From positions 20,894,001-20,958,000 of the forward strand of contig NC_043023.1 of assembly GCF_006345805.1 (NCBI RefSeq): 64,000 nt of DNA, given 5' to 3'. The notes below the pieces were generated by a model that had not been told where the DNA came from, ran no database searches, and was given only the letters and a program-made list of their open reading frames with translations. Position 1 is the first letter of the stretch; the number at the start of each line of letters is the position of its first letter. Made by a program: the position numbers and the translations under genes. Positions 12,129-56,381 of this stretch are shown piece by piece. This stretch comes from Octopus sinensis (lineage: Eukaryota).

Positions 12129-12215
12129 ATGGATGTATATCAGAATATTATGGAAAAAATTTCAAATGGAGACCTACAAGGCGTCAAAAGATATTTTTTA
12201 GATTGTCCGATAAAC
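12129..12215 (+). CDS. ANK-RING-DD gene coding exon 1 ([29 protein letters not shown])
   Basis: Acceptor ttttcaccaacag ends at 12126, ATG at 12129, donor GTAAG at 12216; half-ankyrin-like helix pair. Confidence 0.7.
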
Positions 12216-54200: not shown

Positions 54201-56381
54201 TACTAAATTTTACCTTCACTTGAACTTTTGTATGTCAGAATGACTGAGAACAGGTTCCATTCCTAATTTCCATTTTGAAATTTTAACTGTTAAATAATTA
54301 TGTTAACCCTTTTGATACCAACCCGGCCAAAACCGCCTCTGGCTCTGTGTAGTACAAATGTCTTATTTTCATAAGTTGTGAATTAAAATCTTCCACCAAA
54401 CCTTAGTCACAATTTATGTTCCTAACTCTAGCTTAACGATAACTAAGTTATTTTACTAAATTCTTTATATTCAAAATTAATTGAAAGAAACACAGAGCAT
54501 CTCAACAGAAATACGGTAACAAAAGGGTTAAAGTGACCATGATATTTTTAACCCTTTCGATATCAACCTGGCTGAAACCACCTCTGGCTCTGTAGTACAA
54601 ATGTCTTGTTTTCATAAGTTCCTAACACTAGCTTAATGATAACTAAGTTATTTTACTAAATTCTTTGTTAATTTAAAATTAATTGAAGGAAATACAGAAC
54701 ATCTCAACAGAAATATGGTAATGAAACGGTTAAAAACACTCAGTCAAATGTGCCTTCAATTTGCACAAGATTTGGCTGCTATTTCTAACAAATGAAACAA
54801 AATCTGCAAAATTTACCCTTTCGTTACCAACCCGCCTGGAACCGGCTATGGCTCTGTTATACAAATATCTTGAATTAAAATCTTCCGCTAAACCTTAGTC
54901 ACAATTTATGTCCCTAACACTAGCTTAAGGATAAGTTATTTTACTAAATTCTTTGATATATTTAAAGTAATTGAAAGAAACAGAACATCTCAACAGAATA
55001 TGGTAACAAAAGGGTTAAAGTTACCATGATATTTTTAACACTTTCGATATCAACCTGGCTGAAACCACCTCTGACTCTGTAGTAGCTTAATGATAACACT
55101 AGCTTAATGATAACTAAAGTTATTTTACTAAATTCTTTGTAATATTTAAAATGAATTGAAAGAAACACAGAGCATCTCAAAATAAAGACAGTAAAGAAAG
55201 GGTTAAAGTAACTATGATATTTTTAACCCTTTCAATATCAACCTGGCTGAAACCACCTCTGGCTCTGTAGTACAAATGTCTTGTTTTCATAAGTTCTGAA
55301 TTAAAATCTTCCCCAAACCTTAGTCACAATTTATGTTCCTAACACTAGCTTAAGGATAAGATATTTTACTAAAGTTTTTGTTATATTTAAAGTAATTGAA
55401 AGAAACACAGAACGTCTCAACAGAAATATGGTAACAAAAGGGTTAAAGTGACCATGATATTTTTAACCCTCTCGATACCAACCTGGCTGAAACCACCTCT
55501 GGCTCTGTAGTACAAATGTCTTGTTTGCATACATTCTGAATTAAAATCTTCCACGAAACCTTAGTCACAATTTATGTTCCTAACACTAGCTTAATGATAA
55601 CTAAGTTATTTTACTAAATACTTTGTTATATTTAAAATTAATTGAAAGAAACACAGAGCATCTCAAAATAGAGACAGTAAAGAAAGGGTTAAAGTCACCA
55701 TGATATTTTTAGCCCTTTCGATACCAACCTGGCTGAAACCACCTCTGGCTCTCTGTAGTACAAATGTCTTGTTTTCATAAGTTTTGAATTAAAATCTTCC
55801 ACCAAACCTTAGTCACAATTTATGTTCCTAACACTAGCTTACTGATAACTAAGTTATTTTACTAAATTCTTTGTAATATTTAAAATTAATTGAAGGAAAT
55901 ACAGGGCATCTCAAAATAAGTACGGTAACGAAAGGGTTAAAGACATTGATGGGATTCAATAAATTTGAGATTAGCCTGATTGGTAAAATGGATAAATCAA
56001 TGAAACCCAATAGAATAGGTATTGTTTTGAGGGGACTAAAATAATTTGGGATTGATGCCTCATTCAGAGATTATCTGTAAAAATTGAACGTTCTTTGCTG
56101 GGCAGTTGCAATAGACAACTCTTATATTATTGCTAATGTTTTTCCTGTAATTTCTTATTGTTCTATCTTCAACAGGTATTTTCTTGGGAGTTAAAAGTGT
56201 CAAACTGGGACACATCCGGCATGACTTTTCTGGTAATGTTCAAGAGCAGAGCTTCCAGATGCTGCTCTACTGGTCAACATATTGTGATCCGCAGGAATTT
56301 ACGGTGGATACATTGAGGGCTGCTCTTGAGGATGCTGAGTCCTTCGCTGCACTAAAATGTCTATCATTACAAGAAAAGTGA
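12129..56381 (+). CDS. Spliced gene, 12 coding exons, 655 aa: ankyrin repeats + RING-HC + S/T/Q/P heptad repeat + death domain (putative E3 ligase/adaptor, Mind-bomb-like ANK-RING module)
   Basis: Exons 12129-12215, 18915-19066, 24419-24581, 26754-26908, 29188-29224, 32591-32800, 36656-36831, 41121-41251, 42667-42714, 45189-45719, 54111-54182 and 56176-56381 sum to 1968 nt. All introns are GT-AG, phases match at every junction (0,2,0,2,0,0,2,1,1,1,1) and there is no internal stop. An acceptor 2 nt before the ATG implies a further upstream exon. Confidence 0.88.
12268..12670 (-). mobile_element. Non-autonomous Helitron-like element H2
   Basis: TC start; 3' cccgagcaacgccggg hairpin + CTAG|T; relatives at 29287-29800, 48236-48745, 58765-59146, 56460-56591 and about 39350-39730. 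Confidence 0.8.
12807..14083 (-). mobile_element. Full-length (1277 bp) mariner (DD34D) element, same family as 8021-9296; inactive
   Basis: Same TIRs with TA flanks; WIPRLL, DETWVH and QDNAPVH motifs; frameshifts and a premature stop. Confidence 0.95.
14596..14850 (-). mobile_element. SINE-like family E with (GAT)n tail
   Basis: catcgtttaa.gtccg.tttccatgctagcatgggttggacg; longer copy at about 46014-46740 and short pieces near 15345 and 33940. Confidence 0.6.
15720..16070 (-). mobile_element. Penelope-like element fragment: Cys-rich linker and GIY-YIG endonuclease start
   Basis: Manual translation [24 protein letters not shown] / [14 protein letters not shown] with one frameshift; partial second copy at 19160-19348. 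Confidence 0.7.
16915..17510. repeat. About 600-bp alternating purine-pyrimidine (GT/GC) tract
   Basis: Direct inspection. Confidence 0.92.
18155..18881. mobile_element. Foldback MITE split by a CR1-like 3' fragment
   Basis: Arms 18155-18250 and about 18700-18881 are inverted; same family as the palindrome at 42266-42594. Confidence 0.7.
18915..19066 (+). CDS. ANK-RING-DD exon 2 (ankyrin repeats)
   Basis: [47 protein letters not shown]; acceptor ttcatttcag, donor GTAAGT at 19067. Confidence 0.9.
19533..20100. repeat. (GAT/GGT)n trinucleotide tract
   Basis: Direct inspection; lies in intron 2. Confidence 0.92.
20215..23370 (+). mobile_element. Fragmented RTE-clade LINE interrupted by SINE D (20410-20900), triple-headed SINE A (21141-21888) and SINE A (22366-22945)
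   Basis: Collinear degenerate motifs: [57 protein letters not shown] and a terminal C..(Y)...SH.RH finger remnant. Confidence 0.8.
24419..24581 (+). CDS. ANK-RING-DD exon 3 (ankyrin repeats)
   Basis: [32 protein letters not shown]...; acceptor ttgaccttcag, donor GTTAGT at 24582. Confidence 0.9.
24712..25121 (+). mobile_element. Non-autonomous Helitron-like element H1, second copy
   Basis: A|TC start, hairpin + CTAG|T end; near-identical to 9878-10308. Confidence 0.8.
26754..26908 (+). CDS. ANK-RING-DD exon 4 (ankyrin repeats)
   Basis: [51 protein letters not shown]; acceptor ttcctcttcag, donor GTAAGT at 26909; absent from the ORF track. Confidence 0.92.
29188..29224 (+). CDS. ANK-RING-DD exon 5 (37-bp small exon)
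   Basis: Strong polypyrimidine acceptor tttcttccctctttccataatttccag; (N)[12 protein letters not shown]; donor GTTAGT; supplies the phase 2 to 0 change needed between exons 4 and 6. Confidence 0.8.
29287..29800 (-). mobile_element. Helitron-like H2 variant with an internal about 230-bp GC-richer module
   Basis: Helitron-type termini; near-identical to 48236-48745. Confidence 0.8.
30369..31155 (-). mobile_element. 5'-truncated CR1/L2-type LINE (RT C-terminal region)
   Basis: [19 protein letters not shown]...SLQRRRERY; tail (atctaagttt)x2 abuts (TA)n; sister copy at 57799-58585. Confidence 0.88.
32591..32800 (+). CDS. ANK-RING-DD exon 6 (ankyrin repeats)
   Basis: [53 protein letters not shown]...; donor GTAAGT at 32801. 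Confidence 0.92.
34994..35555 (-). mobile_element. Internally deleted mariner element
   Basis: TIR GGGTTGTCCGGAAAGTTCGTGCCGATTT at both ends; [13 protein letters not shown] transposase C-terminus; a second TIR pair at about 35584-36584 encloses nested SINE and mariner pieces. Confidence 0.88.
36656..36831 (+). CDS. ANK-RING-DD exon 7 (last, degenerate ankyrin repeat)
   Basis: ...[42 protein letters not shown]; acceptor catcatttgtag, donor GTAAGT at 36832. Confidence 0.85.
37570..38700 (-). mobile_element. 5'-truncated CR1/L2-type LINE with RT core, 3' UTR and poly(A)
   Basis: [28 protein letters not shown] and [11 protein letters not shown]; A-tail at 37570-37578. Confidence 0.9.
41121..41251 (+). 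CDS. ANK-RING-DD exon 8: C3HC4 RING finger
   Basis: [40 protein letters not shown] = C-x2-C-x10-C-x-H-x3-C-x2-C-x8-C-x2-C; acceptor tgttccacag, donor GTAAGA. Confidence 0.92.
42266..42594. mobile_element. Foldback MITE with about 125-bp inverted arms (42324-42594)
   Basis: Self-complementary arms seen directly. Confidence 0.8.
42667..42714 (+). CDS. ANK-RING-DD exon 9 (48 bp, phase 1-1 linker)
   Basis: [16 protein letters not shown]; acceptor attaatttcag, donor GTGAGT at 42715. Confidence 0.7.
42953..44085 (+). repeat. Tandem array of six about 184-bp SINE B bodies behind one head
   Basis: Unit starts g(g/a)tatttcgtctgcc recur near 42979, 43162, 43346, 43531, 43716 and 43899. Confidence 0.9.
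44280..44740 (+). mobile_element. Degenerate Tc1/mariner-superfamily transposase fragment
   Basis: [26 protein letters not shown] and CNTK remnants with stops. Confidence 0.55.
45189..45719 (+). CDS. ANK-RING-DD exon 10: coding 21-bp minisatellite (PxxSTSQ heptads)
   Basis: Acceptor attttattttag, donor GTGAGT at 45720; 531 bp, phase 1-1, open frame with 23 heptads. Confidence 0.8.
47643..47937. mobile_element. 295-bp foldback MITE-like palindrome
   Basis: Arms of about 130-140 bp starting atgtaaagtataatagccatctcaatatggctaaccacaaaggg. Confidence 0.8.
48236..48745 (-). mobile_element. Helitron-like H2 variant with internal module, second copy
   Basis: Same termini and module as 29287-29800. 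Confidence 0.8.
49688..50180 (+). mobile_element. SINE D head-to-tail trimer of 5' halves
   Basis: tRNA-like head GGAGGCACATGGCCTAGTGGTTAGAGCAGCGGACTCGCG followed by three about 160-bp repeats. Confidence 0.82.
50180..50510 (+). mobile_element. Degenerate mariner transposase C-terminal fragment
   Basis: NVPEHKS...[13 protein letters not shown]...GIQELQH.WKKCVD. Confidence 0.7.
51037..51553. mobile_element. About 515-bp palindrome of Penelope-like termini, each arm with a minimal hammerhead motif; duplicated at 52630-53154
   Basis: Arms are reverse complements; ctgt-CTGATGA-acggcaacga-GAAA-ctcagagt-a-acag. Confidence 0.7.
54111..54182 (+). CDS. ANK-RING-DD exon 11: death domain N-terminal helices
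   Basis: [24 protein letters not shown] (L..VA..LG..W death-domain pattern); acceptor tttatttcag, donor GTGAGT. Confidence 0.85.
54303..55940. repeat. Tandem array of seven piggyBac-type MITE units (about 185-230 bp)
   Basis: Units read TTAA-CCCTTT(C/T)GATACC...GGTAAC/GTAA.AAAGGG-TTAA, mostly joined by a 16-bp agtgaccatgatattt spacer. Confidence 0.85.
56176..56381 (+). CDS. ANK-RING-DD exon 12: death domain C-terminal part and stop
   Basis: [68 protein letters not shown]; acceptor tcttcaacag. Confidence 0.88.

What the first reader, a model, noticed from the sequence alone, without database searches (positions are those of the whole stretch)
12129..56381. Hand-assembled ankyrin-RING-SQ cluster-death domain protein: an unusual E3/adaptor architecture
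Twelve exons join in frame into 655 aa. ANK+RING resembles the C-terminal half of Mind bomb E3 ligases, but no MIB-HERC2 or ZZ exons were found here. After a single RING come an SQ-rich linker and a death domain. I do not recognise this domain order from vertebrate or fly proteins. It suggests a ubiquitin ligase recruited by death-domain interactions to immune, NF-kB or apoptotic complexes (inference). The ORF track misses or misframes most exons.
Basis: partly seen in the sequence, partly recalled or inferred. Interest (0 to 1): 0.78.

Follow-up and report, generated by a model that had tools for sequence, protein, structure and literature searches.

The report
Octopus ankyrin-RING-death domain ligase gene
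This is a real, already annotated Octopus sinensis gene for a probable ubiquitin ligase with a death domain at its C-terminus, one of dozens of octopus paralogs that share this domain order, which is absent from vertebrates and flies.

Summary
The 12-exon, 655-aa join can be reproduced exactly, and 11 of the 12 exons are correct. The real exon 5 is 29188-29224, with the same length and phase.

The window is Octopus sinensis chromosome CM016885.1. NCBI already models this gene as "E3 ubiquitin-protein ligase MIB2", isoforms X1-X4. X1 (640 aa) carries the full ankyrin-RING-SQ repeat-death domain order.

- **Ankyrin repeats:** about 8 repeats, strongly supported.
- **RING:** IAP/MIB type. All eight zinc ligands are invariant in 33 paralogs.
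- **Death domain:** confirmed by Pfam (26.5 bits), a profile search of the PDB (RIPK1 death domain, E 8e-11) and a fold model (TM 0.87).
- **SQ linker:** a coding 21-nt minisatellite found only in this gene. It is predicted disordered and is probably not a conserved domain.

It is not a true Mind bomb: it has no MIB/HERC2 or ZZ domains and only one RING. It belongs to a tandemly expanded family that I found only in Octopus and in no paper I could search.

The likely role is an E3 ligase recruited into death-domain signalling assemblies. That is inferred, not shown. Interest is moderate.

The parts
12129..12215 (+). Exon 1: start codon and the N-terminal capping helices (aa 1-29).
   Evidence: ATG followed by donor GTAAGT. 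Identical to the RefSeq X1 N-terminus, and the start is conserved in paralogs.
18915..19066 (+). Exon 2: ankyrin repeats (aa 30-80).
   Evidence: AG/GT borders. tblastn 100% identical to P0125. Pfam ankyrin hits.
24419..24581 (+). Exon 3: ankyrin repeat (aa 80-134).
26754..26908 (+). Exon 4: ankyrin repeats (aa 135-186). The donor leaves 2 bases of a codon.
27011..27148 (+). NOT part of the gene product. 27011-27100 is a degenerate partial copy of the 3' end of exon 4 ('[19 protein letters not shown]').
   Evidence: The decoy has a weak donor, GTCCGG. It is absent from all RefSeq isoforms. tblastn gives only 38% identity to ankyrin repeats here.
29188..29224 (+). True exon 5 (37 nt): '[13 protein letters not shown]', the second helix of an ankyrin repeat.
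   Evidence: Acceptor ttccag and donor GTTAGT. Present in RefSeq X1-X4 and conserved in paralogs.
32591..32800 (+). Exon 6: ankyrin repeats plus the family-specific 'FHSEVE' segment (aa 199-268).
36656..36831 (+). Exon 7: last, degenerate ankyrin repeat and the helix before the RING ('[13 protein letters not shown]').
   Evidence: The pre-RING helix aligns with that of the cIAP2 RING.
41121..41251 (+). Exon 8: RING finger, C3HC4 (C328, C331, C342, H344, C348, C351, C360, C363). Reading on into intron 8 gives 'GSGKNTI*'.
   Evidence: Pfam zf-C3HC4_3 28.2-30.9 bits, cut-off 27. All 8 ligands invariant in 33 paralogs. Nearest PDB relatives are the cIAP2, MYLIP, cIAP1 and XIAP RINGs. The O. vulgaris model P0124 ends in the intron read-through.
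42667..42714 (+). Exon 9: a 16-aa cassette, phase 1-1. It is a degenerate copy of the exon type that begins the death domain.
   Evidence: The upstream intron and the exon start align with those of exons 10 and 11. Present in RefSeq X1.
45189..45719 (+). Exon 10: the SQ linker. It holds 23.4 copies of a 21-nt unit (heptad STSQPxx) with 22 S/TQ motifs, and is a phase 1-1 cassette.
   Evidence: Tandem Repeats Finder. Motif count. AF2 pLDDT is almost entirely below 50. Essentially no counterpart in 32 aligned paralogs. Copy number differs between the genome, X1 and X3.
54111..54182 (+). Exon 11: first helix of the death domain ('[24 protein letters not shown]'), a phase 1-1 cassette. It is skipped in RefSeq isoform X2.
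56176..56381 (+). Exon 12: the rest of the death domain plus the stop codon.
   Evidence: Pfam Death 26.5 bits on exons 11+12. The family profile hits the RIPK1 death domain at E 7.6e-11. AF2 pLDDT 86.9, and Foldseek TM 0.87 to the RIPK1 death domain.

Best explanation
The locus is a 12-exon, 44-kb Octopus sinensis gene. RefSeq names it 'MIB2' isoforms X1-X4, but it is not a true Mind bomb. From N- to C-terminus the protein has four parts:
1. An ankyrin solenoid of about 8 repeats.
2. One IAP/MIB-type C3HC4 RING.
3. A disordered linker of about 190 aa. Most of it (exon 10, 177 aa) is encoded by a 21-nt minisatellite.
4. A C-terminal death domain, most like that of RIPK1.

Shown here:
- The gene structure and the three domains.
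- Membership of a tandemly duplicated family that I found only in Octopus and that shares the ANK-RING-DD order.
- Exons 9, 10 and 11 are duplicated phase 1-1 cassettes, so any of them can be skipped in frame. RefSeq X2 skips exon 11, which removes the first helix of the death domain.

Inferred mechanism:
- The death domain brings the protein into homotypic death-domain assemblies (receptor or adaptor complexes of immune, NF-kB or cell-death type).
- The ankyrin surface selects the substrate or partner.
- The RING recruits an E2 enzyme and ubiquitylates components of the complex. Clustering through the death domain may stand in for the RING dimerisation used by IAPs.
- Splicing of the cassette exons, or read-through into intron 8, would give forms with or without a working death domain.

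In effect the protein joins in one chain what vertebrates do with separate proteins, where MIB2 and cIAPs are recruited to RIPK1/TRADD complexes.
For: **Gene model:**. It is identical to RefSeq X1 outside the repeat.

**Ankyrin:** Pfam Ank_2 123.7 bits. AF2 pLDDT is above 90 for most of residues 1-326.

**RING:** Pfam score above the cut-off. All eight ligands are invariant in 33 paralogs. It aligns with the cIAP2 RING, including the helix before the RING, at E 4.7e-6.

**Death domain:** Pfam 26.5 bits against a cut-off of 22.6. The family profile hits RIPK1, ankyrin-G, PIDD, TRADD, Fas, FADD and CRADD death domains. The AF2 model (pLDDT 86.9) superposes on the RIPK1 death domain at TM 0.87.

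**Family:** dozens of O. sinensis, O. vulgaris and O. bimaculoides proteins carry ANK + RING + Death. A paralog with the same architecture lies about 30 kb upstream on the same strand. Every RING-plus-death-domain hit I traced, from a death-domain search of 1.84 billion representatives, was from Octopus.

**Cassette exons:**

**Background from the literature:** vertebrate MIB2 binds and ubiquitylates RIPK1 and is recruited to TNF complex I (PMC7815719). Oyster IAPs combine a death-fold domain with a RING (PMC8917759).
Against: - There is no direct expression or junction evidence in hand. RefSeq models are predictions, and I could not see the reads behind them.
- AF2 gives the RING low confidence: pLDDT is mostly below 50 for residues 327-370.
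- The RING is not at the C-terminus, so it lacks the tail that dimeric IAP-type RINGs use (my own knowledge of IAP RINGs).
- Pfam does not report the death domain when the whole 640-aa protein is scanned.
- Nothing shown here ties the family to immunity rather than to some other process.
- The 'Octopus only' distribution may reflect thin sampling of other cephalopods in the databases.
Confidence: 0.6

Rival explanations
1. The protein is an adaptor or decoy, not an enzyme. The RING is weak or inactive, and the protein mainly scaffolds or blocks death-domain assemblies through its death domain and ankyrin repeats.
For: AF2 confidence for the RING is low. The RING is internal and lacks a C-terminal tail. 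The residue after the last Cys varies among paralogs (K, R, G, L, Q).
Against: All eight zinc ligands are invariant across 33 diverged paralogs that are otherwise 41-50% identical to this protein. That argues for selection on an intact RING. The Pfam score is above the cut-off. The proline of 'CPxC' is kept in most of the aligned paralogs, and the aromatic residue after the first Cys in all of them.
Confidence: 0.2
2. It is an active E3 ligase but works outside immunity and cell death. It might act in neuronal, cytoskeletal or developmental signalling, like ankyrin or UNC5 death domains or Mind bomb in Notch-ligand endocytosis. The family expansion would then relate to cephalopod-specific tissues.
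For: Ankyrin-G and ankyrin-B death domains are among the best PDB matches. NCBI's automatic names point to MIB. I have no expression data.
Against: The best death-domain match is RIPK1, followed (apart from ankyrin-G) by PIDD, TRADD, Fas and FADD. The MIB substrate-binding MIB/HERC2-ZZ module is absent. Tandem, lineage-specific expansion is more typical of immune gene families (general knowledge).
Confidence: 0.15
3. The SQ repeat is a regulated S/TQ cluster domain, phosphorylated by ATM/ATR-type kinases, that couples the ligase to DNA-damage signalling.
For: There are 22 S/TQ motifs in the 177-aa exon. This formally meets the usual density criterion.
Against: It is a 21-nt minisatellite. It has essentially no counterpart in 32 aligned paralogs. 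Its copy number varies between the genome and the RefSeq isoforms. It is broken by a stop in the segmental duplicate. It is predicted disordered.
Confidence: 0.05
4. The join is a gene-model artefact: the death-domain exons belong to another transcript or are dead exons.
For: The O. vulgaris ortholog model P0124 stops after the RING by reading into intron 8. I have not seen the RNA reads.
Against: - RefSeq isoforms X1, X3 and X4 join the RING exon through to the death domain.
- All the phases fit.
- 56 family sequences have RING then death domain in one chain.
- The tandem neighbour has the same order.
- The death-domain exons are intact and 41-63% identical to paralogs.
Confidence: 0.03

Closest known systems
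Mind bomb E3 ligases (MIB1/MIB2)
   Same: Both have a central ankyrin block followed by a zf-C3HC4_3 RING. NCBI names the octopus proteins 'MIB2(-like)'. Vertebrate MIB2 acts on RIPK1 and cFLIP in TNF complexes (PMC7815719).
   Different: The octopus protein has no MIB/HERC2-ZZ-MIB/HERC2 module at the N-terminus. It has one RING instead of two or three. The RING is not at the C-terminus, where a death domain sits instead. MIB2 is described as two MIB and zinc-finger domains, nine ankyrin repeats and two C-terminal RINGs, with the last RING needed for activity (PMC7815719).
IAP-type RING ligases with a death-fold domain (cIAP1/2: BIR-CARD-RING; oyster BIR-DD-RING IAPs)
   Same: The RING is closest in the PDB to cIAP2, cIAP1 and XIAP, including the helix before the RING. 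Both combine a death-fold domain with a RING in one chain. Oyster TII-DD-RING IAPs are described in PMC8917759.
   Different: There are no BIR domains. The order is reversed: here the RING comes first and the death domain last. The death-fold module here is a true death domain of RIPK1 type, not a CARD.
RIPK1 death domain and other death-domain adaptors (TRADD, FADD, PIDD, CRADD)
   Same: These are the best sequence-profile and fold matches of the C-terminal domain.
   Different: The octopus protein has no kinase, RHIM, DED or TRADD-N parts. Sequence identity is only about 24%.
Ankyrin-plus-death-domain proteins (ankyrins 1-3, ANKDD1, NF-kB p100/p105, DAPK1)
   Same: Ankyrin repeats lie N-terminal to a death domain in one chain.
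   Different: None of these has a RING. The octopus protein has no ZU5/UPA, Rel-homology, kinase or Roc/COR domains (Pfam).

Membership tests
Mind bomb (MIB1/MIB2) | N-terminal MIB/HERC2 - ZZ - MIB/HERC2 substrate-binding module | tested here: not met
   Pfam on the 640-aa protein shows only ankyrin and RING families. The paralogs share the same Met1 N-terminus. The window upstream of exon 1 holds only repeats and mariner fragments.
Mind bomb (MIB1/MIB2) | Two or more RINGs at the C-terminus, with the last one catalytic | tested here: not met
   There is a single RING at residues 328-363, followed by about 290 further residues. Some paralogs (P0011, P0031) do have two RINGs and no death domain.
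Mind bomb (MIB1/MIB2) | Central ankyrin repeat block followed by a zf-C3HC4_3 RING | tested here: met
Death domain (DD subfamily of the death fold) | Match to the Death profile above the curated threshold | tested here: met
   PF00531 scores 26.5 bits against 22.6 on exons 11+12. It is not reported when the whole protein is scanned. The family profile hits the RIPK1 death domain at E 7.6e-11.
Death domain (DD subfamily of the death fold) | Compact all-helical death fold | tested here: met
   AF2 gives pLDDT 86.9 and pTM 0.80. Foldseek finds RIPK1 DD at TM 0.87, with RAIDD, PIDD and FADD at about 0.80. This is a prediction, not a solved structure. DSSP merges the first two helices.
Death domain (DD subfamily of the death fold) | Homotypic death-domain binding or oligomerisation | not testable with these tools
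   Needs pull-down, two-hybrid or SEC-MALS experiments.
RING-HC (C3HC4) E3 ubiquitin ligases | Eight zinc ligands with cross-brace spacing | tested here: met
   The pattern is C-x2-C-x10-C-x-H-x3-C-x2-C-x8-C-x2-C. All eight ligands are invariant in 33 paralogs. Pfam zf-C3HC4_3 scores 28.2-30.9 bits against 27.
RING-HC (C3HC4) E3 ubiquitin ligases | Confidently folded RING | tested here: inconclusive
   AF2 pLDDT is mostly below 50 over residues 327-370. The alignment had only 33 sequences and the prediction has no zinc.
RING-HC (C3HC4) E3 ubiquitin ligases | E2-dependent ubiquitin transfer | not testable with these tools
   Needs an in vitro ubiquitylation assay.
IAP family | At least one BIR domain | tested here: not met
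   No BIR hit in Pfam.
S/TQ cluster domain | At least 3 S/TQ motifs within 100 residues | tested here: met
   22 motifs in the 177-aa exon 10.
S/TQ cluster domain | Conserved in relatives and phosphorylated by ATM/ATR-type kinases | tested here: not met
   Conservation fails: it has essentially no counterpart in 32 aligned paralogs and is a variable minisatellite. Phosphorylation cannot be tested here.
Ankyrins / NF-kB p100-p105 (ankyrin repeats plus death domain) | ZU5-UPA module (ankyrins) or Rel homology domain (NF-kB) | tested here: not met
   No such Pfam hits.

The most novel reading that the evidence does not exclude
The Octopus ANK-RING-DD proteins form a lineage-specific, tandemly diversified layer of death-domain-recruited ubiquitin ligases. 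In effect the IAP/MIB2 activity is fused to a RIPK1-like death domain. The variable ankyrin surfaces would select different targets, and cassette-exon splicing would switch the death domain on or off. They could act downstream of octopus-specific death-domain receptors, such as the LRR-GPS-7TM-DD adhesion GPCR whose death domain is 45% identical to a near-identical copy of this one.
Probability: 0.25. Interest if true: 0.6.

Novelty: new variant of a known kind. Interest (0 to 1): 0.4.

Why it matters
If the inferred mechanism holds, octopuses have joined in one protein two activities that vertebrates keep separate: a death-domain adaptor and an IAP/MIB-type ligase. They have then multiplied that protein into dozens of copies.

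A natural fusion of this kind supports the functional link between MIB/IAP-type ligases and death-domain complexes. It also gives a workable entry point into cephalopod innate immune and cell-death signalling, which is poorly known.

There is a practical point too. The automatic 'MIB2' names on these octopus genes are misleading and should not be read as Notch-pathway Mind bomb orthologs.

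Tried and rejected
- **Search for exon 5.** A strict splice-site filter between exons 4 and 6 found nothing ankyrin-like.
- **Word-index search with residues 320-640 of P0125.** It was swamped by SQ-repeat words and gave 3 hits, so it was wasted.
- **The same search with the RING-to-death-domain part of paralog P0008.** It gave only 144 candidates and 3 hits. The C-terminal half diverges too fast for that tool, so I could not survey other phyla for the RING-DD order that way.
- **Locating more paralogs on the chromosome.** Look-ups of P0002 and P0017 failed because only the longest isoform of a gene is indexed.
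- **Literature.** Five full-text searches found no paper describing this octopus family.
- **Similarity to true MIB proteins.** I could not test this directly. MIB1/2 fall outside the length range of the homolog search, and no MIB ankyrin-RING structure is in the PDB.
- **41872-42114 as an exon.** I considered this ORF ('...[18 protein letters not shown]') and rejected it. It ends in a stop, lacks a good donor and is in no RefSeq isoform.
- **A processed retrocopy as the origin of P0123.** Rejected: its locus has introns and is a segmental duplicate.

Full report
**What the window is.** The window is eukaryotic DNA rich in microsatellites, SINE-like repeats and transposon fragments. It is 100% identical, over 61,872 compared bases, to Octopus sinensis chromosome record CM016885.1 in assembly GCA_006345805.1. 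It covers roughly positions 20,894,001-20,958,000.

**Checking the observation.** I picked out coding-looking stop-to-stop ORFs on the + strand and read the splice sites.

A homolog search then returned the RefSeq proteins of this same locus, named 'E3 ubiquitin-protein ligase MIB2':
- X1: XP_036370295.1, 640 aa.
- X2: 616 aa.
- X3: 612 aa.
- X4: 537 aa.

Eleven exons agree.

The real exon 5 is 29188-29224 ('[13 protein letters not shown]', acceptor ttccag, donor GTTAGT). It has the same 37-nt length and the same phases, and it is conserved in paralogs such as P0008 ('[18 protein letters not shown]'). Just upstream of the decoy lies a degenerate partial copy of the end of exon 4 (27011-27100).

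The genomic SQ exon encodes 15 aa more than X1. The extra 45 nt are not an intron, since they lack GT..AG. The RefSeq model was therefore probably adjusted to transcript evidence from another allele; this is my inference.

**The domains.**
- **Ankyrin.** Pfam Ank_2 scores 123.7 bits. AF2 with a 33-sequence family alignment gives pLDDT above 90 for most of residues 1-326. It shows an N-terminal helical cap and about eight repeats.
- **RING.** Pfam zf-C3HC4_3 scores 28.2-30.9 bits against a cut-off of 27. The eight ligands C328, C331, C342, H344, C348, C351, C360 and C363 are the only invariant columns outside the death domain in an alignment of 33 paralogs that are 41-50% identical to this protein. 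The closest solved relatives are the cIAP2 (E 4.7e-6, including the helix before the RING), MYLIP, cIAP1, XIAP and MUL1 RINGs. AF2 confidence for the RING itself is low, which I record as a weakness.
- **Death domain.** Exon 12 alone scored 18.9 bits. Exons 11+12 joined score 26.5 bits (E 7e-6) against the cut-off of 22.6. Pfam does not report the domain when the whole protein is scanned. A profile of five family death domains hits the RIPK1 death domain (E 7.6e-11), then ankyrin-G, PIDD, TRADD, Fas, FADD and CRADD. An AF2 model of the window's own domain (pLDDT 86.9, pTM 0.80) superposes on the RIPK1 death domain at TM 0.87 and on RAIDD, PIDD and FADD at about 0.80.
- **Linker.** Exon 10 holds 23.4 copies of a 21-nt unit, giving the heptad STSQPxx and 22 S/TQ motifs. 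It is predicted disordered. It has essentially no counterpart in 32 aligned paralogs, and its length differs between the genome, X1 and X3.

**Exon architecture.** Exons 9, 10 and 11 are all phase 1-1. They share about 70 nt of upstream intron sequence and the first bases of the exon. They therefore arose by tandem exon duplication of the exon that starts the death domain. In paralogs that exon carries one 'S(T)SQ' motif just before the first helix of the death domain.
- Exon 9 is a degenerate 16-aa copy.
- Exon 10 is a copy whose SQ motif expanded by repeat slippage.
- Exon 11 is the working copy.

Any of the three can be skipped in frame. RefSeq X2 skips exon 11 and so lacks the first helix of the death domain. 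Reading into intron 8 gives 'GSGKNTI*', which is how the O. vulgaris ortholog model P0124 (375 aa, ANK-RING only) ends.

**The family.** The best 70 hits are nearly all Octopus proteins (O. sinensis, O. vulgaris, O. bimaculoides). They carry automatic names such as MIB2-like, MIB1-like, ankyrin-3-like and 'PP6 regulatory ankyrin repeat subunit'. Many have precomputed Ank + zf-C3HC4_3 + Death hits.

I built HMMs of the family's death domain and of its region from the last ankyrin repeats through the RING. Of those, 56 have a strict RING pattern followed by a death domain, always in that order. A few members (P0011, P0031) have two RINGs and no death domain, which is closer to the C-terminal half of Mind bomb.

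The paralog P0008 (ANK-RING-DD, 505 aa) lies at 20,829,848-20,875,973 on the same strand, about 30 kb upstream. The family is therefore at least partly a tandem array.

A phmmer search used P0123, a near-identical copy of this death domain, against 1.84 billion representative proteins. It gave only 159 hits. Every hit that also had a RING, and whose source I traced, was from Octopus. The nearest non-octopus death domains are in echinoderm multi-death-domain or UNC5-like proteins and in a Lingula ankyrin-death-domain protein, none of which has a RING. Other cephalopods may simply be under-sampled.

**Comparison with known families.** The protein is not a Mind bomb in the defining sense. [quoted passage not shown] Here the N-terminal module is absent and there is one internal RING. 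It is not an IAP, since it has no BIR domain. Nor is it an ankyrin, NF-kB or DAPK type of ankyrin-death-domain protein.

The nearest functional analogies are two:
- cIAP1/2 and the oyster BIR-DD-RING IAPs (PMC8917759), where a death-fold domain and a RING sit in one chain.
- Vertebrate MIB2 itself, which binds and ubiquitylates RIPK1 and joins TNF complex I as a separate protein (PMC7815719).

**Most likely mechanism (inferred).**
- The RIPK1-like death domain recruits the protein into homotypic death-domain assemblies.
- The ankyrin solenoid binds a substrate or partner.
- The RING brings in an E2 enzyme.
- Clustering through the death domain may activate the RING, as dimerisation does for IAP RINGs.
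- The SQ minisatellite acts as a flexible spacer.
- Cassette splicing gives forms with and without a working death domain.

**Rivals.** The rivals, with my estimates, are an inactive-RING adaptor or decoy (0.2), a role outside immunity (0.15), an ATM/ATR-regulated SQ module (0.05) and a gene-model artefact (0.03).

**Novelty and interest.** The gene and its paralogs are already in public databases, with automatic and misleading names. Five full-text literature searches found no description of the family. Shuffling of death domains and lineage-specific expansions are well known in invertebrates, so a specialist would be interested rather than astonished. I rate it as a new variant of a known kind, with interest 0.4.

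Noticed in passing
window 61298-63058, minus strand (the gene continues beyond the window end): A long single-exon ORF encodes a thermolysin-like M4 zinc metalloprotease with the motif HEITH...E. Pfam gives Peptidase_M4 80.8 bits and M4_C 90.8 bits. The best NCBIfam match is the bacterial 'zinc metalloprotease ProA' model (298 bits, well below its curated cut-off of 900). RefSeq calls a 632-aa gene here. A bacterial-type M4 protease in an octopus chromosome could be a horizontal acquisition.
   Followed up: partly
L001 (CM016868.1:4190168-4209053, reversed) versus window about 36.8-62.3 kb: A segmental duplicate, about 90-96% identical, of the 3' half of the gene lies on another chromosome. 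It covers the RING exon, exons 9-12 and the downstream flank. Its SQ exon carries a stop and a frame break. RefSeq models it as a 104-aa protein (P0123) made of exons 9+11+12.
   Followed up: yes
P0273 / P0137 (Octopus bimaculoides; not in the window): An adhesion-type GPCR with leucine-rich repeats, a GPS motif, a secretin-family 7TM domain and a C-terminal death domain. That death domain is 45% identical to P0123, the near-identical copy of this gene's death domain. It is a possible upstream receptor for the ANK-RING-DD family. P0143 (source not traced) mixes weak RING, death-domain and LRR hits.
   Followed up: partly
CM016885.1:20,829,848-20,875,973 (L003), about 18 kb upstream of the window start: A paralogous ANK-RING-DD gene (P0008, 505 aa) lies on the same strand, so the family is at least partly arranged in tandem.
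   Followed up: partly
window 45368-45412 (inside exon 10): The genome has 45 nt (15 aa, '[15 protein letters not shown]') that RefSeq X1 lacks, and the segment has no GT..AG ends. X3 lacks a further 84 nt. This suggests copy-number polymorphism of the coding minisatellite, or an edit to the RefSeq model.
   Followed up: partly
window about 42,980-44,080 (intron 9); also about 25,230-26,590 and 9,350-9,670: Tandem arrays of a unit of about 184 bp give a run of near-identical 54-aa minus-strand ORFs ('[20 protein letters not shown]...'). This looks like a satellite or SINE-like element, not coding sequence.
   Followed up: no
window 13050-13977 (-), 8267-9141 (-); 37941-38723 (-), 30482-31093 (-), 57902-58633 (-): Two mariner-type transposase remnants lie at 13050-13977 and 8267-9141 (Pfam Transposase_1 64.7 bits on the first). 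A LINE reverse-transcriptase fragment lies at 37941-38723 (RVT_1 39.4 bits). Two related ORFs with no Pfam hit lie at 30482-31093 and 57902-58633. All are in introns or flanks of the gene.
   Followed up: partly
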